From NCBI RefSeq assembly GCF_001194135.2, contig NC_068999.1, forward strand, positions 33,015,910 through 33,079,909: 64,000 nucleotides of DNA, given 5' to 3'. The position numbers were made by a program, and so were the translations under genes. The stretch comes from Octopus bimaculoides (lineage: Eukaryota). Below the pieces are notes generated by a model. The model ran no database searches. It was not told the origin of the DNA and worked only from the letters and a program-made list of their open reading frames with translations. Positions 2,198 through 63,574 of this stretch are shown here, in pieces (positions within the stretch are counted from its first letter, which is position 1; the number at the start of each line of letters is the position of its first letter).

Positions 2198-3329
2198 TCT
2201 ATATATATAAAAATGAGAATGTGTGTCTGTGTGAATCCCTAAAACTCGAGAACTACGCAACCAATTTCATTCAAATTTTACAGATGCCTTACTTAGGGTT
2301 CCAGTTGTGTTTTAGTCAAAAAAAATTATTAACTTCTTGCGGAGTTCGAGCCCACGGCAACATAATATCTCCTCCACTATTTAAGTATTACGTGTCAAAA
2401 GTGAAACAAAAACACTCATGTCAAATACTTTCACTTTAAAAATGAAACTATTCTACTAACTGAAACAATCACATTTCGATACTGTAATGACAGATACTTT
2501 CAGAGAGAGAGAAAGAGATGTATATGTATACATATACATGTATATGTACACGTATATGCATNNNNNNNNNNNNNNNNNNNNNNNNNNNNNNNNNNNNNNN
2601 NNNNNNNNNNNNNNNNNNNNNNNNNNNNNNNNNNNNNNNNNNNNNNNNNNNNNNNNNNNNNNNNNNNNNNNNNNNNNNNNNNNNNNNNNNNNNNNNNNNN
2701 NNNNNNNNNNNNNNNNNNNNNNNNNNNNNNNNNNNNNNNNNNNNNNNNNNNNNNNNNNNNNNNNNNNNNNNNNNNNNNNNNNNNNNNNNNNNNNNNNNNN
2801 NNNNNNNNNNNNNNNNNNNNNNNNNNNNNNNNNNNNNNNNNNNNNNNNNNNNNNNNNNNNNNNNNNNNNNNNNNNNNNNNNNNNNNNNNNNNNNNNNNNN
2901 NNNNNNNNNNNNNNNNNNNNNNNNNNNNNNNNNNNNNNNNNNNNNNNNNNNNNNNNNNNNNNNNNNNNNNNNNNNNNNNNNNNNNNNNNNNNNNNNNNNN
3001 NNNNNNNNNNNNNNNNNNNNNNCTTTGCCTCCACTGATTCACTTGCAAAGTGTTGAGTAAAATTATTTCGTTGCAGACCTCCTTTGGGTCTTTTTATTAT
3101 CACTACGACACACATAGTCCCCAGTTGGTAATATTGATTTCAAGGCCCTTCTGGATGAGAGACTGGCATTCCACTTAATGTCTATGTTCCATGCTGGCAT
3201 GGATTGGAGAGTTATTAATGTAGAAATATGGTATCGTAGCTACTAACAGTTGAGGGTTGCATAGTCTAGACGGCGTTTTTAGATTTCATTATTCTCTTTA
3301 ACCCGGGCAAAGCCGGGTATTTCTGCTAG
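2198..3329 (+). mobile_element. Non-autonomous Helitron (contains the N gap 2562-3022)
   Basis: Starts A|TCTATATATATATAAAA; subterminal hairpin ACCCGG-GCAAAG-CCGGGT at 3301-3318; ends CTAG|T; no TSD, inserted between A and T. Confidence 0.8.
2562..3022. other. Assembly gap (others at 11752-11761, 18098-18278, 38670-38820, 39683-40124, 49381-49399, 50708-50717, 54048-54057, 58541-58550)
   Basis: Runs of N. Confidence 0.99.
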
Positions 3330-12137: not shown

Positions 12138-14108
12138 CAGGGTGCAGTGAATAAATTGTCATCTAAATTATGCAAAAATGAAAATAACACTGACATCTCA
12201 TTTTAACAGATATATTTACCAAAATTACTTTAAAATATCTTGAAATGCTAAACAGTAAATTTATTGGATCTTTCTGAATTGACGGGCGCCACTTTTTATT
12301 TGTTTTATTTAGTGTGTTTTCTACCGAAACACTTTCAAACTTTGTATACTTGTATATTTTGTCTTATAGAACAGATGAAAATTTTTGTATTCGAAGTTAT
12401 TTCATGTAAAAAATTGTTGTATTTTGGTAATTTCAACCAATCACTGACGTCTATTGAGGTGAAAACAATTACTGCTATGGATTGTAAACAAAACGTTGTG
12501 CGGTGTAATGGGATCTTTTCCCTTGAATAAAATTAGTGCCATTGTTTGTCAACAACAACTATCGGCGGTACTATTATTTATAACATCGTTCGTGCGTTTG
12601 TACTGGTTTTAGTTTTAGAGTTAGGGTTATGATTATTTTTGCCATAACCTAACTCATAAACCCTAACCGTAACCCGAACTCTAACCCTCGAACCCTAAAC
12701 CCCTACTAGGGAATAACGATATAATTACCAGGGAATAACGATCTTGACACCAGCAAAAATTGTTTACAAAAACAGCAGTAACTGTATTCAGCTGAATAGA
12801 CGTCAGTGATTGGTTGAAATTACAGAAATATGACAACTTTAACATGAAATAACTTGCAATATAGAAAGTTTTGTTAAGAAGGCTGAGAGAAAAAGATGTT
12901 TTATATGACACGTTTTACCAGTATCCCAAGTTTGAAAGTGTTTCATTCAGAAAACAAGTGGCGCCCGTCAATTCAGAAAGATCCAATTTATTCAATAAAA
13001 TCACCATTGGCTTCAACCATGGTGTCCAAAAAACTTCAGAATCTCCTGCACCTCTTCTGGATAGTCTCCTTGTTTAAGTTGGTGAATGCTGCCATAATCC
13101 TTGCCTTCAGTTCATCTTTGGTGTTACAAGGAGTTTTGTTGGTCTCTCGGTGGAGTTAGGTGGCCAGATCTTAGGGTGATGTGGTCGCAGAAATTGTCTG
13201 ACAGCCACAACTGGGTTCTCCTGCTTGTGTGTCATGGGGCAAAGTCTTGCTGCCAGATATAGTGTCTTCCAGCTGCCACCCTGTTGACCCAGGACAGCAC
13301 TACCTCCTCCAGACTCCATATTGAGTCTGAGGCTGTGTGGGAAGATGAATGGAAGCATAACATCGCCACCACTAGTGATCACTCCTAACACCATGATGTT
13401 GACTGGATGTTTCATTTTTTAAGTTCTCAGTACATGTTTTGGGGACTCGGCAAGCTAACGGTTGTTCTGTGCGTTCACCATCTGATCCTGGCAGAAATTT
13501 TTCTCATCTGAGAAAAACCAAAGCATGTTCAGTTGGAGGGCATCCTTGAGTTTGTTCAAAAGCTTCGTAGCATGGTTTTTCCTCTTGTCCTTGATAGCTT
13601 GGGATAAAAATTGGTCCTTTCTCATCTTCTATGAGGAATACCAAATGTCTTCATGCACTAACCTGCCTGATAAGAAACTCAAATACTCCCATGTCCATGG
13701 TGATGGACCTGATTGACTTGGAGGGATTGTTGTCAATCATGGCCTGGATCTCACCAACAAACTCAGGAATTCTTTTCTATCAGAATGATCAGAGTGAGCT
13801 TTCCAAGCTGCCGTACCTTTGTAATCCCCATTAGACTCATCCAACTCTTTCTGAATCCTCTGCACTGTCCTCAGATTGACACCCAGACACTCTGAAATGT
13901 TCGTGTAGGAGCTTCCAGCATGAATGCCAAGCAGTACAACATGTTGTTTCCAAATTTATGGCATAGTGAATTGCATCATGATGCTGTTTTTGTCACAGAC
14001 AATGCCCAACTGACCCTACTATACTGTGTAGTTGACAGAACCCAAAACAAACAAACAATGCATGAAATGAAAAATATAAACTGGCAACAATTTACCAATC
14101 GCAACCTC
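12138..14108 (-). mobile_element. DD37D (maT-type) mariner-family transposon, decayed and MITE-interrupted
   Basis: TA|CAGGGTGCAGTGAATAAATTGTC terminus; minus-strand WFFSDEKNFCQDQMVNAQNNR (~13455-13526), KHPVNIMVLGVITSGGDVM, WQQDFAP* and WPPNS. The far end near 14108 is only a degenerate TIR match. Confidence 0.8.
12266..12984. mobile_element. Fold-back MITE, 719 bp, 8-bp TSD AATTTATT
   Basis: Terminal IR GGATCTTTCTGAATTGACGGGCGCCACT / AGTGGCGCCCGTCAATTCAGAAAGATCC; TSD at 12258-12265 and 12985-12992; further internal inverted arms; single-copy empty site in the paralogous maT copy near 18781-18789. Confidence 0.9.
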
Positions 14109-16927: not shown

Positions 16928-17030
16928 GTGAATGGCATTGATCTACGATGGGCTACCCATGAAGAGGCTGCAGCAGCCCTCAAGGGTGCAGGTGACACTG
17001 TAGAAATTGTAGCTCAATACAAACCTGATG
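16928..17030 (+). CDS. dlg1: Discs large exon, C-terminal half of PDZ3 ([34 protein letters not shown]+G)
   Basis: (CT)n tract then TTTCTAG acceptor; G|GTAAGA donor; 103 nt, phase 0 to 1. Matches the Dlg PDZ3 motif DLRxAxHExAAAALKxAGxxVxIVAQYxP, recognised from memory. Confidence 0.96.
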
Positions 17031-18047
17031 GTAAGAATTAAAAATTTTTTTTCTGTCAATCTTTTTCCTATTGCATGTATTTCACTATTAGTTTATCTCT
17101 CTACTGGTCGAATCCCCTTTCATATTAAAACAATGTTACAGGCCATAACGCACATGTGTGAGTACAAGTGAGGAAGTACGTTCTGTCCACCTTTTTTTAT
17201 CTATTAAATTATAAGCTAGTTATTGTTAATTTGAAACTTCCTTTGCTCTATGATAGTTTTAGATATTGAATTTTTTTCTTATCCTTAGACTCACTGACTA
17301 CAGTTCTAACCATTCACTTTTTCTTCCTCTCTTTATCTCACCGGTAAAATTAAAAAAACAATTCCTTTTCTTAACCGTTATACATTTAATGTCCTACAAC
17401 ATTTACACGCAGTTCTCAATTTAACTCTGCCTCCTAACTGAGGTTGGTAGATAACTAATTGATTAAATTACTATTTTCTTCTGAAGATCTGGTATTTCAA
17501 GGTAATTATGCAATTGTCTGTAAGAATGACGCAACATATTGGTATACACTAGTGAAACGTGTAAAGATTACATAATTTATGATAAAGTGATAAATCCTTT
17601 GTTTTGTTCTGCTCTCGTGTGTGTGTATACACACGCACATACATAGATGTGTATGTATACACACACAGATGGAGACTGTTGAGGAGTACCTTTCTATAGA
17701 AGAAGAATTACTCTACCAACATGTTTAATTTAAACAACTTATGTCAGTTAATAAAAATGTTAGGCATTTTTATGTAATATTTTCACTTTAACCCTAGCGT
17801 GGGTATAAACACATGTAGAAACTTCAAGAAATATATGGCTAATTCTATATTATCAACAATCTGTCTCAAATCAAATTTAGCTAAAAATAATAGCATGTAA
17901 TACATTGAGTTGAAATATAGAATCCTTGGCTGAAAGCTGCATGGTAGACTCAAACCATGTTTCTTCTATAGCTGAACCCTAACACCACCTCCTCTCTCCC
18001 TCTGTAAGTGGTTCCTTAAAGCATTTTAGAGCATAGTTACAATATAT

Positions 18048-18097
<50 letters not shown>

Positions 18098-18352
18098 NNN
18101 NNNNNNNNNNNNNNNNNNNNNNNNNNNNNNNNNNNNNNNNNNNNNNNNNNNNNNNNNNNNNNNNNNNNNNNNNNNNNNNNNNNNNNNNNNNNNNNNNNNN
18201 NNNNNNNNNNNNNNNNNNNNNNNNNNNNNNNNNNNNNNNNNNNNNNNNNNNNNNNNNNNNNNNNNNNNNNNNNNNNNNACATAACAGCATAGAAATACAT
18301 TACTGCTCTATGCTTTAGAGTGTGCTTCTTTTTCGGCTATAGGAAACATTGA

Positions 18353-18666: not shown

Positions 18667-19240
18667 CAGGGTGCAGTGAATAAACTGTCATCTAAATTAT
18701 GCAAAAATGAAAATAACAGTGACATCTCATTTTAACATTTACCAAAATTACATAAAAATATCTTGAAATACTAAAGAATAAATTTATTCAATAAAATCGC
18801 CATTGGCATCAACCACAGTGTCCAGATGACTTCAGAATCTCCTGCAACCCTTCTAGACAGGCTCCTTGTTTAAGTTGGTGAATACTGCCATAACCCTTGC
18901 TTTCAGTTCATCTTTGGTTATCTTTGGTGTTACAAGGAGTTTTGTTGGTCTCTCACTCGACTGCGCCCCACACATAATAATTAAGGGGTTGCAGTCTGGG
19001 GAGTTAGATGGGTGATGTGGTCGCAGAAATTGTCTGCCAGCTAGACTGGGTTCTCCTGCTTGTGTGGCATGGTGCAGAGTCCTGTTGCCAGACATAGGGT
19101 CTTCCAGCAGTCACCCTGTTGACCCAGGACAGCACTACCTCCTACAGGCACTTGATGTAGGCCTCCATGTTGAGTCTTAGGCCATGTGGGAAGATGAATG
19201 GAGGCATAACATCACCATCACTAGTGATAAATTCAAACAC
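18667..19240 (-). mobile_element. Second, truncated DD37D/maT copy (3' end)
   Basis: Same TA|CAGGGTGCAGTGAATAAA terminus as 12138; minus-strand WQQDSAPCH and NSPDCNPL motifs. Confidence 0.8.
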
Positions 19241-28300: not shown

Positions 28301-29343
28301 AACATTGCTTGACAACTGATGCTGATGTGTTTACATCCCCATAACTTAGCGGTTCAGCAAAAGAGACCATTAGAATAAGTACAAGGCTTATAAAGAATAA
28401 GTCCTAGGGTCGATTTGCTAGACTAAAGGTGGTGCTCCAGCATGGCCGCAGTCAAATGACAAACAAATAAAAGAATAAATGTATATGGTGGTATTTTACT
28501 TGGAAGAATTGAAGAGGAGGTAATTAAGCAACAAGATGTTATGTTACCACTTGAAACAGATGTATTAAATGCATTCAAAATATCAGTAATTGGTTTGGGG
28601 ATTATTCTAACACACACACACACACACGCACATTATTATTTATATATTTATTGTTGTGCCTTGGGAGAGTCATTACGCCAATAATAATGATGCATGCACA
28701 GGTTCAATTCCACTTCTTTATTTTAGTCAATTGGTTAAATATCTAAGCAACTAACTAATTGATTATTTGTATAACCAGCACATAAAACAAACGATCAATT
28801 AGTTAGTTGGATAGATACTTAACCAATTGACTAACATGAAAGAAGTAGAAATGTACCTGTGCATGTGTTGTTATTGGTGTAATGACCCTCCCAAGACACA
28901 ATAAAATTTGTTTCAACCCACTAATTCACATTGAGAATCTTGCAAACCAAATACAAAACCAATATAGTTATTTGCAGTTGTCCAGTGAATCTTTCACTGG
29001 TGTTCTGTATTTCTGCTGGTGAAAATGTCAAGAGATTGTCTGGCCAACTTTGTGCAGAGCAGACACTGCACAGGTCAAAGCACTGTTTCTTTCTTCAACA
29101 TTGTTTCAGTGTTTTACTGATATTCATCAGCAAGACTTACACATACATATATGCTTGTTGCCAATATGCATCAGCAAAGCGTAAAAGAAAATATGAGAGA
29201 ATGAGATGACAAAGGAAAAAATGATTATCTTATTAACTTCATTAGCTTACAGTTGTTTCTGCTATAAGATGCAGTCAGGTTCATAGTTGATTGCCTGAGT
29301 AACAACTTATAGTTTAATCAGGGCTTCAATCAAAAGACAAATA

Positions 29344-29712
29344 GTGCTGGCAAAATTTGCATTCTCTAAATTGTATAACGTCTTGAGAAACTTTATTCTT
29401 AGTGTCAAGACCAAGATTCATATATCTAACTGCTATGTCTACTTTGTGTTAATGTATAGAAGTGTGGCATGGTCTGTAACATCGAAAATGGGGAGGTGCT
29501 CGGAGAGTTGTGAAGTGTGGTTCTTAAAGAGAATATTGGACAAAGTGTCAAATGAAGGAGTGATGACCTGGGCTACAGTAAACAGGAAACTGCTTCGTAA
29601 TATAAGGACCAAGCAACCGAGATATTTTGGTCATGTGGTGAGGAAAGAGGGTCTAGAGAATTTAATGATGACCAGAAAGATTGAAGGGAAAGGGAGCAGA
29701 GAAAGAGAATGA
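29344..29712 (+). mobile_element. RTE-clade LINE relic (C-terminal part of the RT ORF)
   Basis: AFSKL...KTKIHISNCYV..VLMY...AWS...EVWFLKRIL.DKVSNE...RYFGHVVRKEGLENLMMTRKIEGK is typical of the RTE/BovB ORF end. Confidence 0.8.
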
Positions 29713-36222: not shown

Positions 36223-36905
36223 TTAATGTTTTTATAATAAACTATGAAAGTCTGTTTCATTGGATAGAAATAGTCAATTTGCAAAACTCAGCTGGCTAGT
36301 GGGTCTTATTCTGAGTCCTTTTGAAATCATCAGAAAACCAGTGTGTGTGGGTGTGGATGCACACACCTTTCTCTCATAGCCATTGTCATCATAATTCAGT
36401 GATGACAGACTTGGGAATATTTCATCCTCCTCTCTCCACTACTGCTTGATTCACGAGGGACACTTAACATGCTAGAATTAGCAGCCATATCACATTCCAC
36501 TGACATAATTATGTTTCTTTAAATGTGCAATTTTGTACTTAATTCCAGTGTAGGTTCGATTGCTGATTTTATATTGTTTGTAGATAGTATTTTATTACAT
36601 TTGTTTGTGACAATTGACTCTTCTCACTTGTAATGCTTTCTTCATAATGTGGGAGAATGAACCCCCCCCCCTCCATTCACCTTCTCAAACTTTTCTTCTG
36701 TTAAAGGTAATCCTCTAAGAGGATTAAGACATGATTGTATCCAAAGACCTGGTTTTCAGCAGTATCACAGTGATGATAATAACAGCAACACTTCATATCA
36801 CTGTACTAACTTTTGTGTTCACTAAACCTGCAATTATTTGAGATGTGTTTATTGTAATGTTCACTGTTTATTCATGTCGACTCATTCTTTCCATTGATTT
36901 TGCAG

Positions 36906-37008
36906 AATACAATCGGTTTGAAACAAAAATTCAAGATTTACGGGAACAAATCATGAACACAAGTACTGGCAGTTTACGAACAACACAGAAACGAACTCTT
37001 TATGTCAG
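36906..37008 (+). CDS. dlg1: Discs large exon, PDZ3 end and PDZ3-SH3 linker ([35 protein letters not shown])
   Basis: TTTTGCAG acceptor, CAG|GTAAGG donor; 103 nt, phase 1 to 2; joins the previous exon as G+AA=Glu. Matches Dlg EYxRFEAKIHDLREQxMN...GSLRTxQKRxLYVR. Confidence 0.96.
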
Positions 37009-38228: not shown

Positions 38229-39233
38229 CAGGGGTTGGACAAAATAATGGAAACACCTTAAAATTTCAAACAAATGTATTTTAATATGAAGTAGGACCGC
38301 CTTTGGCAGTAATTACAGCTTGAATTCTATGAGGGATGGACCCGTACAAAGTTTGAATTGTTTCCAAAGGAATTATTGTCCATTCTTCAGCTAAAACAGT
38401 CTCCAGTTCTTGTAGTGATGATGGTAGAGGATATCGACTCCTTACTTGTTTTTCTGAAATGCACCATAAATCGTCGTCGTTTAACGTCCGCTTTCCATGC
38501 TAGCATGGATTGGACGATTTGACTGAGGACTGGTGAAACCAGATGACTACACCAGGCTCCAATCTGATTTGGCAGAGTTTCTACAGCTGGATGCCCTTCC
38601 TAACGCCAACCACTCAGAGAGTGTAGTGGGTGCTTTTACCCACACAAAGGCCAGTCAGGCGGTACTGGCNNNNNNNNNNNNNNNNNNNNNNNNNNNNNNN
38701 NNNNNNNNNNNNNNNNNNNNNNNNNNNNNNNNNNNNNNNNNNNNNNNNNNNNNNNNNNNNNNNNNNNNNNNNNNNNNNNNNNNNNNNNNNNNNNNNNNNN
38801 NNNNNNNNNNNNNNNNNNNNCCTCATGCCATTCAGTAACAACTTTAGCTGTGTGAATTGGTGCATTATCATCCTGAAAGATTGCGTTTCCCTCTGGAAAC
38901 AGTTCCGCAACCATAGGATGAATTTGATCAGATAAAATGCTTAAATAGTCTTGACTATTAATTCTGCCATGAATGGAAACCATTGGGCCGACGGATTTCC
39001 AAGATATTGCCCCCCCCCTTCTATGTTTAACAGTTGGAAGAAGGCAGTCTAGGTCAAATGCTTCTTTTGGCTGTCTCCACACGTATACTCGGCTGGTGGT
39101 CGGAAATAAGGTAATGGACGACTCATCCGAGAAAATAACATTCTTCCACTCAGGGACCAATTCTGTGGGTTTTTACTCCACTCTAAACGCTTCACAACGT
39201 TTGTTTTTGAAAGTAGTGGTTTTCTGTTTGCAC
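38229..39233 (-). mobile_element. Tc1-like transposon, 3' half with DDE domain; SINE insertion and N gap inside
   Basis: ORF 38636-39160 has WKNVIFSDES...FQDDNAPIHTA; C-terminus LETVLAEEWTIIPLETIQTLYGSIPHRIQAVITAKGGPTSY*; TA|CAGGGGTTGGACAAAATAATGGAAACACC TIR at 38229. Same family as 9144. Confidence 0.92.
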
Positions 39234-39395: not shown

Positions 39396-39682
39396 ATAGT
39401 AATTCCCCGACTATTGCGGGCGTTACATTCCAAAAACTTCCGCGATAGATGAAAATTCACAGAGTAGAAACAATACTGTACTGTATATTTTTCTTTATAA
39501 TTTGTATATACTTATTTTATTACAAATGCAAAACACCACCACAGAGGAATCGACATAAGCTTAAATAATAAACAATGGTATGGTGAGGGATTATTGTATA
39601 GAAATCACAGAAATCACACATCAAAATCTTATGCTTCAAGTTGAACCTAACCTTACTGTAAAATCTGTTGGTTAAAAGGAAC
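39396..39682. mobile_element. Probable Tigger/pogo-like element end, running into an N gap
   Basis: AGTAATTCCCCGACTATTGCGGGCGTTACATTCC...CCGCGATAGATGAAAATTC resembles Tigger-type termini; the other end is not visible. Confidence 0.45.
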
Positions 39683-40559
39683 NNNNNNNNNNNNNNNNNN
39701 NNNNNNNNNNNNNNNNNNNNNNNNNNNNNNNNNNNNNNNNNNNNNNNNNNNNNNNNNNNNNNNNNNNNNNNNNNNNNNNNNNNNNNNNNNNNNNNNNNNN
39801 NNNNNNNNNNNNNNNNNNNNNNNNNNNNNNNNNNNNNNNNNNNNNNNNNNNNNNNNNNNNNNNNNNNNNNNNNNNNNNNNNNNNNNNNNNNNNNNNNNNN
39901 NNNNNNNNNNNNNNNNNNNNNNNNNNNNNNNNNNNNNNNNNNNNNNNNNNNNNNNNNNNNNNNNNNNNNNNNNNNNNNNNNNNNNNNNNNNNNNNNNNNN
40001 NNNNNNNNNNNNNNNNNNNNNNNNNNNNNNNNNNNNNNNNNNNNNNNNNNNNNNNNNNNNNNNNNNNNNNNNNNNNNNNNNNNNNNNNNNNNNNNNNNNN
40101 NNNNNNNNNNNNNNNNNNNNNNNNACTAAAAGGATGCATTCCTGCTTTTATCTTTCTCCCAAACCCCACCAAAAAAGAAGTAACACACCATTATTGATTA
40201 TCTGTTTGAGAAGTTACGAAATACAAATTGTGTCATCAACGCTGATTATTAAGCAAACTAAAGGCTTTTAATTTGTTTTGGTGGGTGAGATCAATATTAT
40301 TTTGATATTAAATCTTAACTTTGTGTAGGATAACACCACTGCATGGGACTCTGCATCAGTGAGTCAGTCCTTAAATGCACAATACCATAAGAATCATACT
40401 AAATTTTATTTACATTCATTTCAAAGGAAGTGAACCACTCTAATGCAAGGGAGGAAACTCTAATCTCTTCTGTCCTTCATTTTTGTTTTTATACCCTTTT
40501 TTCTTTTTAGCTAAGATGCCTTATGGTATTTGTTCCATCTCTCACAGTCCAAGCTCAAA

Positions 40560-54443: not shown

Positions 54444-54620
54444 GGCCTTGTTTGATTATGATCCCACAAAGGACAGCGGATTGCCAAGTAAAGGCTTAGC
54501 ATTTAAATATGGTGACATCTTACATGTAACCAATGCCAGTGATGATGAGTGGTGGCAAGCCAAACGTATCACCCCAGAAGGGGAAGAAGAAGGAATGGGT
54601 ATAATCCCAAGTAAAAGACG
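54444..54620 (+). CDS. dlg1: Discs large exon, SH3 domain ([60 protein letters not shown])
   Basis: TTGATTGCAG acceptor, CG|GTAAAA donor; 177 nt, phase 2 to 2; AG+G=Arg. Has the MAGUK SH3 signatures ALFDYD, GDILHV, DDEWWQA and IPSKRR. Confidence 0.97.
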
Positions 54621-56710: not shown

Positions 56711-56774
56711 AGTCGAACGTAAAGAACGGGCACGGTTGAAGATTGTCAAGTTTACTGGCAAAGGGAATGATAAG
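56711..56774 (+). CDS. dlg1: Discs large exon, start of HOOK region (R-VERKERARLKIVKFTGKGNDK)
   Basis: TTTTTGCTCAACAG acceptor, AAG|GTAAGT donor; 64 nt, phase 2 to 0; CG+A=Arg. Matches VEKKERARLKxVKF of Dlg1. Confidence 0.95.
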
Positions 56775-57018: not shown

Positions 57019-57127
57019 GTGGCAGCAGCAAATGAAAAAAGGAAAAGCAATTTCTCCTTCTCTCGAAAGTTTCCGTTTATGAAGAGTAAGGACCACAGCG
57101 GTAGTGAAGATGTAAGCGCTGATGAAC
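57019..57127 (+). CDS. dlg1: Discs large exon, I3-like HOOK insert (VAAANEKRKSNFSFSRKFPFMKSKDHSGSEDVSADE+C)
   Basis: TTTTAAATTCTAG acceptor, C|GTAAGT donor; 109 nt, phase 0 to 1. The FSRKFPF(M/Y)KxxD motif is shared with vertebrate SAP97 I3 and Drosophila Dlg as I recall them. Confidence 0.93.
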
Positions 57128-57422
57128 GTAAGTTGTGCTGGTGCCATCTTGCCCTTTTTTCACAATACATAATTACTCGACATCATATTTGGAGTATGCT
57201 TTTCTTTAATTGACAAACTAACACTTGAATGTACGTACATATACATACATATATATATATATATACAGACAGACAGATAAGTGAAGAACTCCATGTGTTC
57301 TTCACTAGTCTAAACAATATTGTTAGCCTGGTGTGCCAACAGAGAGCTTATAAAGTATTTTGCCTGGATTGATAATCCTTCACTGTTAGCTCTGTTGTTA
57401 TTTATACATACATATGTATATT

Positions 57423-57485
<63 letters not shown>

Positions 57486-58934
57486 CATCAACCCTGCTCT
57501 AACAACCCTCATGACTCATTATATCTAAGGATCATATTAACCTGTGTTTTTTATTAATTAACTGATGGAGTATGTATATATTTAGCTTCTATTTCTAGAA
57601 GGTCAAACAACTGTGAAGACCTAAGTTTTAGTCACTGTTATGATTGTTGGTCAGGATTAGACCAGATATATTGTGCTGATAGTGGCTCACTGTTCAATAA
57701 GAAAATGATACCAGTAATTATACTACTACTTGTACTTTGCTGAATTATGAATCACTCATGCAGATATCATTACCTTTTCAATTATGAAAATTTAATGATC
57801 TAGATTACTCTGTAGACTCTATCTATCCACCAGTCACTTCTGTTTTAGACACAATGTAGACTATATTCAAATGAATTCATCTTCCTACATGATTTAATCT
57901 ACCATAGCAGATACTGAGGCTGTCTTGCACTGTGTATGTGTTGTAAATATTGAGATTTACATGCACATGCACACACACACACACACACACACATTAGATG
58001 CCAAGATTTTGCAATATTTCACTTTTAGTATAGTGGTCAACTGAATCTATCACAACTAACCTCAATGGAGGTTCCAACAGGATCTTTCTACTTTCTAAAA
58101 ATACCTACCAAATCTCCCTCAAATCACATCCTACTGTCTTAAAACAAGGAAGGACACATTGGATAATGTAGTCCAAGGTATCTGTCTGAAAAGGCAAGAC
58201 AGTCACTGCAGGATCACCTTCAATTAGTGTGAGCTGGGATTAAACAACTACACTTCAAACTGAACCTCAATCTAATTTACCCTATTCCAGGTCTTTCAGT
58301 TGACAATGACTGTGAAGGCTATAGTCACCATCCCAGCCAATCACTTAACAGATTCATCTTCTGTGGAACCAGTATCTCAAAAGGCTATTCATATTCCATG
58401 AGTGAGAATCAAAAATATTTGAAGTAAAATCCTCAAAAAAAAAAAAAAAAAATGCCCTGATGTCTGCCTTCAGTTGGTCATCTCTATGGTAACACTAACC
58501 CTAATGCTGATCCTCACATTAAGTATAACCCCCCCCCCCCNNNNNNNNNNACCCCCCCCCCCACACACACACACACACACACACCAAAAAAGAAAAAAGG
58601 CTCAGGCATGGCTTTGTGGTTGAGATGCTCACTTTACAACCATATGGTTTCAAGATAAGACCCACTACACAGCACTAAGTGTCCTCTGCTATAGCCATAG
58701 GCCTTGTGCATTTGGTAGACAGATAGTTAATACTTTGGAGATGATTAGTACCATGAGTGAGGACAAGATACACTTTGTGTAGGGATAGAAAGCAATTTTG
58801 GTAGAGACAAGTGATACTTTATGTAGTGCTCAGTGATTTATTAAGTTTAAAACTGCAAAAGTTTCAGAAATATATTGAAGACTAGAAACACTCATGCATA
58901 TATACAAATGTACTCAGACAGACTGCTCTTTCTT

Positions 58935-58992
<58 letters not shown>

Positions 58993-59841
58993 CCTCTCTC
59001 TCTCTCTCACATACACACACAAACACCCATTAAAGAGGGTTTTCTTGCTACACGTAGAAAGCTTTGTTGAAATGTTTTGCTTGTTACACATTAATAAAAT
59101 TGTAGGACAATTACTGTTAAAAACATTTTTTTTTTTTTATAAATGTAAAGTTTGTAAGATTTTCAGAGAAAATAATTTGCAATATTTAGTTTAGTTTTTC
59201 TACATTCTAAGTTCAAATCCTGCCAAAGTAAATTTCACCGTTTAACCTTCTCTGAATGATAAAATATATTCCAATCATTTAACGGACTTTATTCAGTTGA
59301 TTACATCCTTCCCTCCCTCTTTCTCTGTCAGTTAGTGTCAGAAATCATTACAGAATCAATAAAGTATCAGTCAATTTAACCCTTTGCCTGTCCTGTGTGT
59401 CACTTGTGCTACACACGATATATTTCTCCTGGCAGCCATGCTTATTATATGATTCACATTCCCATTTTTTTCTTTTCTTCTTTCAACACCCTGAGTAATT
59501 TGGGACTTTTGAAAGGAAAGCTTTAGAACATGAAACAAGGGATAACTAAAAGTCTGAAAACAAGTATGGATGTTTAGGACAAACTTATGAAAATGCTTTG
59601 GACAGGCAAAGGATCACTCAAATTATTCCTTCTTCTAAATACTTGTGGGATTGGTACCTTCTGTAGTATAATTCAGCTACATCTCTGTATGGAAACTATA
59701 AACAATGGAACAGAGTCAAAAGCTTGATACACACACAACAATAGTTGTACTGTAAAACAGTTATTGGTTCATAAACAATGGAAGGAAATAAAAGACAATG
59801 TAATGTTGACATAATATATTATTCATAATAGAGTTAACTAG

Positions 59842-60009
59842 GCAGGAGTGGCTGTGTGGTAGGTAGCTAGCTTACCAACCACATGGTTCCGGGTTCATCC
59901 CCACTGCGCGGCACCTTGGGCAAGTGTCTTCTACTATAGCCCCGTGCCAACCAAAGCCTTGTGAGTGGATTTGGTAGACGGAAACTGAAAGAAGCCCATC
60001 GTATATATG

Positions 60010-60040
<31 letters not shown>

Positions 60041-60256
60041 GTGTGTATATGTTTGTGTGTCTGTGTTTGTCTCTCCAACATCGCTTGACAACCGATGGTG
60101 GTGTGTTTATGTCCCCGTAACTTAGCGGTTCGGCAAAAGAGACCGATAGAATAAGTACTAGGCTTCCAAAAAGAATAAGTCCTGGGGTCGATTTGCTCGA
60201 CTAAAGGCGGTGCTCCAGCATGGCCGCAGTCAAATGACTGAAACAAGTAAAAGAGT
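59842..60256 (+). mobile_element. Young full-length tRNA-derived SINE with an internal (TA)/(TG) microsatellite
   Basis: A box TGGCTGTGTGG, B box GGTTCATCCC, CpGs retained, AAAGAG-type tail. Older copies near 11220, 18403, 28190, 41400, 49910 and 50310. Confidence 0.85.
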
Positions 60257-61870
60257 AGTAAATATTTAAATTTAGGATATACATGAATGTGTGTGTGTGC
60301 ATGCGTGCATATAATGTGCAGGTAAGATTGTATGCTTATGAAATCATTGGGTTCAGGTTCCACTACATGGCGCCATGGGCAAGTGTTTTCTGCTATACCT
60401 TAGACCAACTAACACTTTGTGAATGGAATTGATTGTGTGTGTGTGTATGTATAATCATCACCATTTTAACGTCCATTTTTCCATGTTTGCATGGAATAGA
60501 TGGAGTTTATTGAAACATTTTATATGACCAGATGCCCTTTCCTGTCACCAACCTTTACCAGTTTCCAAGCAAGAATAATATTTTCCCGTGGCCAGAATTG
60601 TTTTTGCGGAATATTGGAAATGAATGCAATTCATTTACAACAATCATGCAATATCAAGACAAGGAGACACAAACATACACACCCATACTTACTAATACAA
60701 TAGGCTTCTTTCAATTTTCGTCTATCAAATCCACTCATAAGGCTTTGGTTAACTCAGGGTTATAGTAATAGACACTCACCCGAAGTGCTACACAGTAAGT
60801 CTGAACCAAAAACCATTTGGTTGGAGAACAATTGTGGTGTCACAGATAACTTGATCTTAATAGATTTGATTTCACTCAATAGTTACACCATCAGTAAATG
60901 CTGTTATTTTCAAAAGATCTTTCAAATAAGAATATCTTAATACACTCACACACAGATGTGTGTGTGAATTTGTGTGCATGACATCTTGTGTCTTGTCATT
61001 AACACAATACAAACAAAAAAAATGGATACCTGTTCTCAATCACCCATACTAGTGGAAAACAGGTTTGCAGCTGAAAGAGCATCTGACCTCAACAAGCTTT
61101 GTCTAAGCACTTGTCTGCATGGAATAATGAACATAGAAATTGAACAAATGAATATATATATATATATATATATAGTTACAGAAACTGTGAAGGCGCATGG
61201 ATCAGTGGTTAGAGTGTCAGGCTCACAATCATGAGGTAGTGAGTTGTGTTCTTCAGCAAAACACTTTATTTCATGTTGCTCCAGTCCACTCAACTGTAGA
61301 AATGAATTGAAACATCACTAGTGCCAAGCTGTATCAGCCCCTTTGCCTTTCCCTTGGATAACATCCATGGCATGGAGAGGGGAGGCTGGTATGCATGGGC
61401 GACTGCTGGCCTCCCATAAACAACCTTGCCTCGACTTGTGCCTCAGAGGGGAACTTTCTAGGTACAATCCCATGGTCATTCATGACCAAAGGGGGTCTTT
61501 ACATGTTACAGAATCCACTGCTTAATGGGTTCAAGTCCATCCTTATACACTTTACTCTATGATCCCTCTGGGATCAATTTAGTCAACTTAGCTCCTCCTC
61601 AAATGTTTCAGTTAGAAATGTTTTTGCAAAATCATGAGAGTAGATAAAATTGCCCTAGATACAATACTTTGGCAAGATTTGAACTCAGAACACTAAGGAC
61701 TTTCAACATTTGTAAAGAACTAGTCATATTACTAATGTCTCTTGAAATTCATTGTTCCTTTTCTCCAAACCATGCAACCTTGTCTTAATATTTTTATTCT
61801 TTGAAAAATAAATATTATCTCTCCTCTTATTTTCCCACCTCTTCTTTTTGGCTGCTTTTCTGGATTATAG

Positions 61871-61873
61871 AAG
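61871..61873 (+). CDS. Candidate 3-nt microexon (AAG) of dlg1
   Basis: TTATAG|AAG|GTACGT; no AG from 61724 to 61868; pyrimidine tract with TGC at 61853-61855; frame-preserving in the phase-1 intron. No transcript evidence available. Confidence 0.45.
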
Positions 61874-63553
61874 GTACGTTTTAAACTTTACTTATTAATT
61901 GTTCTCTTCATTAACAATTCTGCAATTAGTCTAAATATATTCTCTCTCTTTCTCTCTCTCCCTAAATTGTGTGTAAAACATTAACTATATTCTTCTGCAA
62001 TGAAATTTTAACACACATACCACAACTGTTTCCAGTTTGCCTAAGTTGGTTCTGTATTTCAGTCTAACATGATGATTGAAGTAGGAATAATAAGTCATAC
62101 AAGTTCAAGTATTATTTTTATGGTTTCAATACTAGGCTATACTGCTTAATATTCTACTAGAGTTACAATACTAGATTATACTAGTAAATGTAATATTACT
62201 GGGTTACAATGCTAGGTCAAATTATTTAATGTAGTATTACTGGGGTTAAAATTCTAGGTTGCCTCTAGAAGAGAGTCATTCATAGACACCCTAAACAAAC
62301 CCGGAGCAGATGAGGCCCCTCAGTTCTTTAGCTGCTCATCTAAGAGAAGGTAACTCCATAAAAATCATACATCCTTTTAATTACTGGGTTCATGGAACTT
62401 GTTGCACTAGACCAGTACAAGTTTGAAGAATGAGAAAGCGGGACTCTCTCTGCACAAACCATAGCCACTATTTTAATAGTCATTGTGTGGTCGTTCAGCA
62501 AACGAAGGCACCAGCAACCAATATACTTTAATTCATAAGTTCAGTGGCAACAGGGCAAAGAGGTGATGAGTACAGGTAAAGGACACTACAGGAAGTGTTC
62601 AGTCTTGACTCTGCACACAGGCAGCCATAAGATGATGGTTGTTATTAAGCTATGTCTTGTTAAAATCTCTCTCATTGAAGTAACAAGAGAGTCCACCACA
62701 ATTCTAGGTTAAAGTAGTTAATTTAAGGATATGTTACAATATGTTACTATTAGAGATCTGAAAAATCATCATAGCAACAATGACTTGTAATTACTTGGAA
62801 GAATAATTACAAAACAATTCATATTATTCTTGTTGTTGTTATTATTATAAGCCAATTTAACCACTCCTGTCCTTAATAATTAGTGGTTTTCTGTTAATGT
62901 TAGAAATCAGTAGTAATGTGTAAATAACTGAATATATATTGAACTCCAGTTTGTTGCATCATAGGTTCAACTTATGCTGTAGGCGCTATTATTCCATTTT
63001 GTCATTGGGCAAATACACAATAGGTTATTTGGTTTTCAAAATTGGCTTACAACTTTACTACAGTATCCTTGTTTTTGAGTGCACTGATATGGTAACAAAT
63101 GTTATCATTTAATATATTCAGAAGTCAAACAAATTTCTCTCTCTTGCATTAATGTTAATTAGACAATCTTTTTGTAAAGTCACTTTTAATGAATGAGTTT
63201 CTTGAATAATCTCTGTGATTCCATTCATATTATTTTTGATATACTTGGCGGTGGATTGGTAGAATTAGTAGAGTGTCGGACAAAATACCTTGTGGTATTT
63301 TGTCATGTCCCTTTACTTTCTTATTTCAAGACTCACCAAGCCTTTTATCCCTCTAGCAGTCAATAAAGTACCACTGATGTGCTGGACTCAATTTCCTTGA
63401 CTTTTTCCATGCCCCTGCCCAACTTTTCTGGCTCTGTGCCAACATTACAAATTGTTGTTGTTGTTATTATTATTATTATTTCTTTGTTTTCTTTACCAAT
63501 TTCTATTGCGCCAAAAGCTAACCAATATGATTTCTTGTTTTTTCTGCATGCAG

Positions 63554-63574
63554 AAGGCGATTGCCCTGGCCAAG
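63554..63574 (+). CDS. Candidate 21-nt microexon of dlg1 (x-GDCPGQ-x), or start of an alternative terminal exon
   Basis: Branch-like GCTAAC at 63517-63522, T-rich tract, TGCATGCAG acceptor; AAG|GTTTTT is a weak donor; phase 1 to 1. Confidence 0.35.

What the first reader, a model, noticed from the sequence alone, without database searches (positions are those of the whole stretch)
61724..61879. Candidate 3-nt neural-type microexon (AAG) in the Dlg HOOK-GK linker
Seen: 145 nt with no AG (61724-61868), CTAAT/TTAAT branch candidates, a long pyrimidine tract, TGC 15 nt before the acceptor, then TAG|AAG|GTACGT, a good donor. It preserves the phase-1 frame (C+AA=Gln, G carried on), adding one residue. 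Established: neural microexons of 3-27 nt have long AG-exclusion zones and an upstream UGC bound by SRRM3/4-type eMIC proteins, a bilaterian program; standard annotation misses them; fly and vertebrate Dlg have alternative inserts at this junction. AGAAGGT alone arises by chance, so the case rests on the context.
Basis: partly seen in the sequence, partly recalled or inferred. Interest (0 to 1): 0.7.

Follow-up and report, generated by a model that had tools for sequence, protein, structure and literature searches.

The report
Real 3-base exon in octopus Dlg

Summary
A 145-nt AG-free stretch runs from a TACTAAT branch-point candidate through a 31-nt, 94% pyrimidine tract and a TGC to TAG|AAG|GTACGT.

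The window is the Octopus bimaculoides Dlg gene. In all 13 informative RNA runs the mRNA reads ...GATGAAC-AAG-... straight after the HOOK exon that ends at 57127.

Five runs read C|AAG|AAGGCGATTGCCCTGGCCAAG|GTGGAT. The 21-mer is a second microexon at 63554-63574, and the genome just before it is CAG, not AAG. The 3-nt AAG is therefore its own exon, somewhere between 57128 and 63553.

Only three AG|AAG|GT sites lie there. 61871 alone has good splice signals and sits in a block conserved in two other octopus species. Reads cannot place three bases directly, so this last step is inference (confidence about 0.85).

The "neural-type" reading is not supported: no skipped form appeared. "Annotation misses it" is only half true, because RefSeq proteins already read SADE-Q-G.

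Squid or cuttlefish-type cDNAs carry the same AAG plus 21-nt pair. A mussel has a 6-nt microexon (CGGAAG) at the same junction.

Verdict: a new member of a known kind, of modest interest.

The parts
54444..54619 (+). Dlg SH3-domain exon ([12 protein letters not shown]...IIPSKR)
   Evidence: Identical to XP_014780568.1. The loose end before the next exon in RNA contigs confirms its 3' end.
56711..56774 (+). HOOK exon 1 (RVERKERARLKIVKFTGKGNDK)
   Evidence: RNA contigs give the joint 56774|57019 with GT..AG ends. Sequence.
57019..57127 (+). HOOK exon 2 (VAAANEKRKSNFSFSRKFPFMKSKDHSGSEDVSADE + C), ends in phase 1, donor gtaagt
   Evidence: It is covered by RNA in every run, and all spliced reads leave it at 57127.
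61724..61868 (+). 145-nt AG-exclusion zone upstream of the microexon
   Evidence: In organism B, 61722 is A>T, which extends the zone further.
61730..61736 (+). TACTAAT, candidate distal branch point and 5' edge of the conserved block
   Evidence: The substitutions at 61727 and 61729 in both relatives stop just before it. Its use as a branch point is inferred, not mapped.
61819..61849 (+). Polypyrimidine tract (29 of 31 pyrimidines)
   Evidence: In the relatives it differs only by A>G at 61837 and a 1-nt T-run deletion at 61845.
61853..61855 (+). UGC motif between the pyrimidine tract and the 3' splice site
   Evidence: This is the position described for SRRM3/4-responsive microexons in bioRxiv 10.1101/2024.09.17.613571. 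Binding was not tested.
61869..61870 (+). Acceptor AG
   Evidence: Unchanged in organisms B and F.
61871..61873 (+). 3-nt microexon AAG (completes Gln with the preceding C and supplies the first base of the next Gly)
   Evidence: AAG follows 57127 in the mRNA of 13 runs. It must be a separate exon upstream of 63554. This is the only one of three AG|AAG|GT sites with good signals and conservation.
61874..61879 (+). Donor GTACGT; with the exon it reads AAG|GTACGT, 8 of 9 matches to MAG|GTRAGT
   Evidence: Unchanged in organisms B and F, and the conserved block continues to about 61900.
63554..63574 (+). Second, alternative 21-nt microexon AAGGCGATTGCCCTGGCCAAG (adds EGDCPGQ). Acceptor ttttctgcatgcag| with UGCAUG at -9..-4; weak donor |gtttttac
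   Evidence: It matches exactly the RNA contigs of X3, X61, X51, X52 and X54, which read C-AAG-AAGGCGATTGCCCTGGCCAAG-GTGGAT. Genome sequence. Decapodiform cDNAs carry AAGGCGACTATCCTGGCCAAG.

Best explanation
AAG at 61871-61873 is a constitutively included 3-nt internal exon (µ3) of the Octopus bimaculoides Discs-large gene, in the linker between the HOOK region and the guanylate-kinase (GK) domain.

Inferred exon order: HOOK exon 2 (ends ...GAA C) | µ3 AAG | optional 21-nt microexon at 63554-63574 | optional 36-nt cassette (GTGGATTAGCC..., outside the window) | GK exon (GTGGTGATGAACC..., outside the window). Every one of these exons is phase 1 to phase 1.

Including µ3 turns the ancestral junction codon C|GT (Arg, as in SADE-R-GDEPILSYE of gastropods and bivalves) into CAA GGT (Gln-Gly).

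Shown: the AAG is in the mRNA, it is a separate exon, and it lies within 57128-63553.

Inferred: this particular site is the source. An exon of 3 nt cannot be recognised by exon definition. It probably depends on the extended, conserved and unstructured region from the distal TACTAAT branch point to the AG, on the long pyrimidine tract, and on a near-consensus donor placed 3 nt after the acceptor. The two flanking introns would then be removed one after the other, much as at a recursive splice site except that 3 nt stay in the mRNA.
For: 1. The window-encoded exons are identical to XP_014780568.1, a Dlg-family protein of O. bimaculoides, which reads SADEQGGDEPILSYE.

2. RNA contigs and raw reads leave 57127 and continue with AAG in all 13 informative runs. 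X1, X4, X27 and X57 give AAGGTGGATTAGCC. X2 gives AAGGTGGTGATGAACC. X48-50 give 154, 131 and 83 reads. X3, X61, X51, X52 and X54 give AAGAAGGCGATTGCCCTGGCCAAGGTGGAT.

3. The 21-mer is in the window at 63554-63574 with AG and GT flanks. It is preceded by CAG, not AAG. The first AAG is therefore a separate exon between 57128 and 63553.

4. XP_014780566.1 reads ...GSL-R-GDEP, so the GK exon joins as C|GTGGT without an AAG. The 21-nt exon is likewise followed directly by GTGGAT. AAG therefore does not belong to the downstream exons.

5. Only three AG|AAG|GT sites lie in the interval (0.28 expected from composition), and there is no AG|AAG|GC site. 61871 has a 145-nt AG-free zone and a 5-of-6 donor match.

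6. In orthologous DNA contigs of two other octopus species, 61730-61900 carries 1 and 2 of the 22 listed substitutions each (6.1 expected; P=0.008 and 0.036) and only a 1-nt indel. The flanks carry the rest plus 10-21 gap letters. TAG|AAG|GTACGT is unchanged.

7. No Rfam match and no excess RNA structure (z=+0.54) explain the conservation.

8. Decapodiform cDNAs read GATGAAC-AAG-AAGGCGACTATCCTGGCCAAG-GTGGAGATGAACC.

9. The mussel Potamilus has a 6-nt exon ccatgccag|CGGAAG|gtaata at the same junction, encoding P-E-G.
Against: 1. No read can be assigned to a 3-nt exon. No splicing intermediate (AAG joined on one side with an intron retained on the other) was seen at 61871. Only 2 intronic reads covered the area in about 6% samples of three poly(A) runs.

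2. The conservation test uses closely related species (about 4.5% flank divergence), so its P values are modest.

3. The downstream exons and the RefSeq exon table could not be read. The RefSeq placement of the 3 nt is therefore unknown.

4. A more distant relative (L001) shows no AGAAGGT in the 8 kb after its HOOK exon. Its introns may simply be longer than the fetched flank.
Confidence: 0.85

Rival explanations
1. One reading: the AAG is an alternatively spliced, neural-restricted microexon of the SRRM3/4 (eMIC) programme, skipped outside the nervous system.
For: The cis-architecture fits: UGC between the pyrimidine tract and the AG, a long branch-point-to-AG distance, a strong 5' splice site, and a conserved, unstructured upstream region (compare PMC12871342). 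Skipping would stay in frame and would recreate the ancestral SADE-R-GDEP.
Against: All 13 informative runs from 6 studies show AAG. These include 6 runs of the 2015 multi-tissue study and a run (X2) with a different downstream isoform. In the raw runs no spliced read extends into 57128-57129, as a C|GT junction would. Both RefSeq isoforms seen include it. Caveats: tissue labels were hidden, contigs drop rare variants, and minor loose-end classes were not printed.
Confidence: 0.08
2. The mRNA's AAG comes from 57599-57601 (tttctag|AAG|gtcaaa), the site used by the 2015 gene model, and 61871 is a look-alike.
For: It is the nearest AG|AAG|GT to the upstream exon. UniProt A0A0L8GJ11 (P0242) ends ...SADEQGQTTVKT*, which is read from an exon starting at 57599.
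Against: The donor GTCAAA matches 3 of 6. There is an AG only 11 nt upstream of the acceptor AG. The site lies inside a roughly 40-nt high-copy repeat. Organism F has a 17-nt insertion 10 nt downstream of it. No RNA read at 95% identity or better covers the modelled exon body, so that terminal exon looks like an alignment artefact.
Confidence: 0.05
3. The AAG comes from 62347-62349 (ctaagag|AAG|gtaact).
For: The donor matches 5 of 6 and the site lies inside the permitted interval.
Against: The acceptor AG is immediately preceded by another AG. Further AGs lie at about -16 and -25, and there is no clean pyrimidine tract.
Confidence: 0.02
4. There is no 3-nt exon: the extra AAG comes from tandem NAGNAG-type acceptors (..AGAAG|) on the downstream exons, or from an internal GC donor after the first three bases of the 21-nt exon.
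For: Three-nucleotide differences at junctions are usually NAGNAG events. The 21-nt exon starts CAG|AAG|GCG, so AAG|GC is formally a GC donor.
Against: The isoform C-AAG-AAGGCG...CCAAG-GTGGAT needs an AAG that the genome does not have in front of the 21-nt exon (CAG). AAG precedes three different downstream exons but is absent when those exons follow one another. GCGATT is a very poor GC donor.
Confidence: 0.02

Closest known systems
Ancestral molluscan microexons in the Dlg HOOK-GK linker (6-nt CGGAAG 'PEG' exon of the mussel Potamilus streckersoni; 'LEG'/'LEEG' isoforms of Pomacea; 'PEG'/'PEAEG' in other, unlabelled Logan transcripts)
   Same: Same gene and same phase-1 junction after ...S(A/G)(D/E)E. 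The exon ends in ..AAG|GTA. A pyrimidine tract with a TGC lies just before the AG. It is followed by an acidic serine-rich cassette and then (R/G)GDEPILSYE.
   Different: It is 6-9 nt long rather than 3 nt. Octopus reads TAG|AAG where the mussel reads CGGAAG, so the octopus acceptor may have moved onto an AG created inside the old exon. That is my inference and was not tested.
SRRM3/4 (eMIC)-dependent neural microexons (bioRxiv 10.1101/2024.09.17.613571; PMC12871342; Torres-Mendez et al. 2019, cited from memory)
   Same: Length within 3-27 nt. UGC between the pyrimidine tract and the AG. Long branch-point-to-AG distance. Strong 5' splice site. Conserved and unpaired upstream region.
   Different: No alternative or tissue-restricted inclusion was detected. 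Dependence on the factor is untested.
Classical 3-nt microexons: the NCAM1 'AAG' triplet exon (from memory: Santoni 1989, Reyes 1991) and the 3-bp micro-exon of Drosophila homothorax (PMC7392893)
   Same: A single-codon-sized internal exon, conserved across large evolutionary distances. For NCAM the sequence is also AAG.
   Different: Those exons are alternatively spliced. This one looks constitutive and sits in tandem with a 21-nt alternative microexon.
Recursive (ratchet) splice sites of long introns (from memory: Burnette 2005, Duff 2015)
   Same: A strong 3' splice site with a long pyrimidine tract sits directly against a strong 5' splice site inside a long intron. Stepwise removal of the two intron halves is the likely mechanism.
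   Different: A recursive site leaves nothing in the mRNA. Here 3 nt remain and are translated.
Vertebrate and fly Dlg HOOK-region alternative inserts (DLG1 I2-I5; from memory)
   Same: The same linker between SH3/HOOK and GK, and combinatorial small cassettes. The serine/acidic cassette (LASDSREGSL here) resembles vertebrate ..SDSESSYRG.
   Different: No 3-nt exon is described there to my knowledge. Homology of the individual inserts was not tested.

Membership tests
Microexon (internal exon of 30 nt or less) | Flanked by canonical AG acceptor and GT donor in the genome | tested here: met
   TAG|AAG|GTACGT at 61868-61879.
Microexon (internal exon of 30 nt or less) | Its bases are present in mature mRNA between the neighbouring exons | tested here: met
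   AAG follows 57127 in 13 RNA runs. RefSeq proteins read SADEQG.
Microexon (internal exon of 30 nt or less) | The bases are not part of the upstream or downstream exon | tested here: met
   The genome after 57127 is GTAAGT. The 21-nt exon is preceded by CAG. The GK exon joins the cassette without AAG.
Microexon (internal exon of 30 nt or less) | Direct assignment of the mRNA bases to this genomic site (intermediates, mutagenesis or an annotated exon table) | tested here: inconclusive
   No intermediates appeared in the sampled poly(A) reads. The site was chosen by excluding the two other candidates and by conservation.
SRRM3/4-eMIC neural microexon programme | UGC motif between the pyrimidine tract and the 3' splice-site AG | tested here: met
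   TGC at 61853-61855, after the tract that ends at 61849 and 14 nt before the AG. Criterion taken.
SRRM3/4-eMIC neural microexon programme | Long branch-point-to-AG distance and a strong 5' splice site | tested here: met
   145-nt AG-exclusion zone starting at TACTAAT; donor AAG|GTACGT. The branch point itself was not mapped.
SRRM3/4-eMIC neural microexon programme | Alternative inclusion (exon skipped in some cell types) | tested here: not met
   No skipped form in 13 runs or among about 370 junction reads. Low-level skipping cannot be excluded.
SRRM3/4-eMIC neural microexon programme | Neural enrichment of inclusion | not testable with these tools
   Run, sample and tissue names are coded and library descriptions are absent.
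SRRM3/4-eMIC neural microexon programme | Inclusion depends on the eMIC domain protein | not testable with these tools
   This needs knock-down or ectopic expression.
NAGNAG tandem acceptor | The 3 extra bases lie directly upstream of the downstream exon as a second AG | tested here: not met
   The genome before the 21-nt exon is GCAG, not AGAAG. AAG is absent at the cassette-GK and µ21-cassette junctions.
Recursive splice site | Zero-length exon, with nothing retained in the mRNA | tested here: not met
   Three bases are retained and translated.

The most novel reading that the evidence does not exclude
The cephalopod 3-nt exon may be the remnant of an ancestral molluscan 6-nt microexon (NNGAAG, 'P/L-E-G'). 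A TAG arose inside that exon and the acceptor slid 3 nt onto it. The result is the shortest possible coding exon, now constitutive and kept for the whole history of coleoid cephalopods. It retains the full cis-architecture of eMIC-type neural microexons, and it is paired with a truly regulated 21-nt partner. This would be a natural case of a regulated microexon becoming hard-wired.
Probability: 0.25. Interest if true: 0.5.

Novelty: new member of a known kind. Interest (0 to 1): 0.36.

Why it matters
It gives a clean, well-supported example of a 3-nt exon that is included everywhere it could be checked. That raises a question about how a spliceosome handles an acceptor and a donor only 3 nt apart without a tissue-specific helper.

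It corrects the 2015 octopus gene model, which truncated Dlg at a false terminal exon.

It also shows that the Dlg HOOK-GK linker of molluscs is built from a tandem series of phase-1 microexons (3, 21 and 36 nt in octopus; 6 nt in a mussel). That offers a tractable system for following how microexons shrink, become fixed or become regulated.

The protein consequence is small: Arg becomes Gln-Gly in a flexible linker.

Tried and rejected

2. I looked for splicing intermediates at 61871 in three raw RNA runs and found none. Only 2 intronic reads covered the area.

3. I tried to read the downstream cassette and GK exon acceptors in the octopus genome.
- Lookups of the RefSeq and UniProt octopus proteins were not on record.
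- An exon-level protein search returned no octopus genomic ORFs.

4. A more distant relative (ENA ERZ24900295, L001/L002) has the SH3 and HOOK exons. It shows no recognisable island or AG|AAG|GT in the 8 kb after HOOK exon 2, and the two haplotigs diverge there. This was uninformative.

5. The Pomacea isoforms with LEG/LEEG were not on record.

6. The first protein search returned only short fragments, because the tool keeps hits no longer than about 1.75 times the query length.

7. A conserved non-coding RNA as the reason for the island was rejected: no Rfam match and no structure signal.

8. A paper search for octopus microexons found no description of this exon.
Full report
**Observation.** The sequence is as described.
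- There is an AG at 61722-61723 and no further AG until 61869-61870.
- TACTAAT lies at 61730-61736 and CTTAAT at 61784-61789.
- The tract 61819-61849 is 94% pyrimidine.
- TGC lies at 61853-61855.
- The core reads TAG|AAG|GTACGT, with the exon at 61871-61873.
- AGAAGGTAMGT occurs once in the window against 0.07 expected.
- Only 10 of 3240 AGs in the window have 145 nt or more of AG-free sequence upstream.

**Gene context.** The + strand carries Dlg exons:
- the C-terminal part of PDZ3 at 16928-17030;
- a linker exon at about 36904-37006;
- the SH3 exon at 54444-54619;
- HOOK exon 1 at 56711-56774;
- HOOK exon 2 at 57019-57127, ending GATGAAC|gtaagt in phase 1.

Their translation is identical to XP_014780568.1, 'disks large homolog 2-like isoform X7' of Octopus bimaculoides, which continues ...SADEQGGDEPILSYE. 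RNA contigs confirm the 56774|57019 junction.

**The AAG is in the mRNA.** Reads and contigs that leave the exon at 57127 continue with AAG in all 13 informative runs.
- X1, X4, X27 and X57 read AAGGTGGATTAGCCAGTGATAGTAGGGAAG.
- X2 reads AAGGTGGTGATGAACCTATCTTATCATATG.
- The raw-read runs X48, X49 and X50 give 154, 131 and 83 such reads. Their consensus is the X1-type sequence.
- X3, X61, X51, X52 and X54 read AAGAAGGCGATTGCCCTGGCCAAGGTGGAT.

In the raw runs no spliced read extends into 57128-57129, as a skipped C|GTGG junction would. I therefore found no skipped form. Low-level skipping cannot be excluded, because minor loose-end classes were not printed and contigs drop rare variants.

**The AAG is an exon of its own and lies inside the window.**
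- The 21-mer AAGGCGATTGCCCTGGCCAAG is in the window at 63554-63574. Its flanks are ttttctgcatgcag| and |gtttttac.
- The three genome bases before it are CAG. In the isoform C-AAG-AAGGCG...CCAAG-GTGGAT, the first AAG must therefore come from a separate exon between 57128 and 63553.
- RefSeq isoform X5 (XP_014780566.1) reads SADE-Q-G-GLASDSREGSL-R-GDEPILSYE. The GK exon thus joins the 36-nt cassette as C|GTGGT with no AAG.
- The 21-nt exon is likewise followed directly by GTGGAT.
- Together these rule out NAGNAG acceptors on the downstream exons as the source.

The exon order is therefore HOOK exon 2 | AAG | (21 nt) | (36 nt) | GK exon, all in phase 1.

**Which site supplies the AAG.** The interval holds three AG|AAG|GT sites and no AG|AAG|GC site.
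- **57599.** The donor is GTCAAA, and an AG lies 11 nt upstream of the acceptor AG. The site sits in a roughly 40-nt high-copy repeat. Organism F has a 17-nt insertion 10 nt downstream of it. No RNA read at 95% identity or better covers it. The 2015 model A0A0L8GJ11 used it as a terminal exon (..QGQTTVKT*), which looks like an alignment artefact.
- **62347.** Its acceptor AG is directly preceded by another AG, and there is no clean pyrimidine tract.
- **61871.** It has the 145-nt AG-exclusion zone, the 31-nt pyrimidine tract and a near-consensus donor.

Conservation points the same way. Orthologous DNA contigs of two other octopus species span 61480-62100. In each, 22 substitutions are listed. 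Only 1 (organism B) and 2 (organism F) fall in 61730-61900, against 6.1 expected (P=0.008 and 0.036). Only a 1-nt indel falls there, while 10-21 gap letters fall in the flanks. The conserved block begins exactly at TACTAAT and ends about 27 nt after the donor. Nothing in Rfam matches the region, and it is not more structured than shuffled sequence (z=+0.54).

I put the probability that 61871-61873 is the source at about 0.85. The assignment is not direct, because no splicing intermediates were seen.

**Wider conservation.**
- Logan cDNA contigs from a protein cluster that includes Sepia (Acanthosepion) pharaonis DLG1 read GATGAAC-AAG-AAGGCGACTATCCTGGCCAAG-GTGGAGATGAACC. An optional 54-nt cassette follows the CAAG. 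Both microexons therefore predate the octopus-decapodiform split.
- Gene models and transcripts of other lophotrochozoans read SADE-R-GDEPILSYE when nothing is inserted.
- Many of them carry tiny inserts at the same point: Pomacea LEG/LEEG, unlabelled mollusc-like transcripts PEG/PEAEG, and Lingula QTEG....
- In the mussel Potamilus streckersoni, 'PEG' is a 6-nt exon, ttttttttccctccatgccag|CGGAAG|gtaata, 955 nt after the HOOK exon.
- Octopus TAG|AAG|GTA lines up with CGGAAG|GTA. This suggests, but does not show, that the octopus acceptor moved onto an AG created inside an older 6-nt exon.

**Mechanism.**
- Shown: the exon is included in every transcript sampled, and it converts the junction Arg codon into Gln-Gly.
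- Inferred: exon definition is impossible at 3 nt. Recognition probably rests on the extended, accessible branch-point-to-AG region and on the strong donor, with the two introns removed in sequence, as at a recursive splice site that keeps 3 nt.
- The architecture matches what is described for SRRM3/4-responsive microexons: UGC between the pyrimidine tract and the AG, long branch-point-to-AG distance, and a strong 5' splice site.
- Constitutive inclusion argues against a neural switch. The variable exon is the 21-nt one. It has two UGCs and a UGCAUG at its acceptor and a weak donor.

**Verdict.** It is not shown to be neural or alternative, and RefSeq proteins already contain it. It is a new member of a known kind, of modest interest.

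Noticed in passing
window 63554-63574: A second, alternatively included 21-nt microexon AAGGCGATTGCCCTGGCCAAG (adds EGDCPGQ). Its acceptor ttttctgcatgcag carries two UGCs and a UGCAUG (Rbfox-type) motif, and its donor gtttttac is weak. It is present in the contigs of 5 of 13 runs and conserved in decapodiform cDNAs. It is the better candidate for a regulated or neural microexon.
   Followed up: partly
window 57599-57625: The 2015 O. bimaculoides gene model (UniProt A0A0L8GJ11) ends in a false terminal exon here (QGQTTVKT*). It apparently arose because AAGGT was aligned to the nearest AG|AAGGT. No RNA reads support it, and the gene was split into two models (A0A0L8GJ11 and A0A0L8GJ54).
   Followed up: yes
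window 56773: One RNA contig (run X51) reads GATAGG instead of GATAAG at the HOOK exon 1/2 junction. That is an A>G change (Lys AAG to Arg AGG), either a SNP or A-to-I editing.
   Followed up: no
window 57034: An extra A in the A-run of HOOK exon 2 appears in about 5-11% of raw RNA reads in three runs. It is probably homopolymer slippage or a sequencing artefact.
   Followed up: no
window 57574-57619, 61666-61701, 61921-61977: Short high-copy repeat segments, with depth spikes of 10-100 times in the DNA contigs of three octopus species. Two of them bracket the conserved microexon block.
   Followed up: no
L006 58133-58138 (Potamilus streckersoni, GCA_016746295.1): A 6-nt microexon CGGAAG (P-E-G) at the homologous Dlg junction, with TGC 5 nt before its acceptor end. 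It is followed by a 24-nt acidic cassette that begins about 3 nt upstream of 63162, and by the GK exon at about 66838.
   Followed up: partly
window 29299-29709 (+), 13110-13418 (-), 18856-19110 (-): Open reading frames that look like transposon remnants inside the Dlg introns: a reverse-transcriptase-like C-terminal fragment and mariner/Tc1-like transposase fragments. There are also several assembly gaps (N runs at 2516-3049, 18035-18286, 38657-38834 and 39677-40131).
   Followed up: no
L001 / L002 (ENA ERZ24900295): Two haplotig-like contigs of an unidentified mollusc or cephalopod carry the Dlg SH3 and HOOK exon 1. They are 97% identical up to about 12085 and then diverge. Only L001 keeps HOOK exon 2 (ends GACGAAC|gtaaga).
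   Followed up: partly
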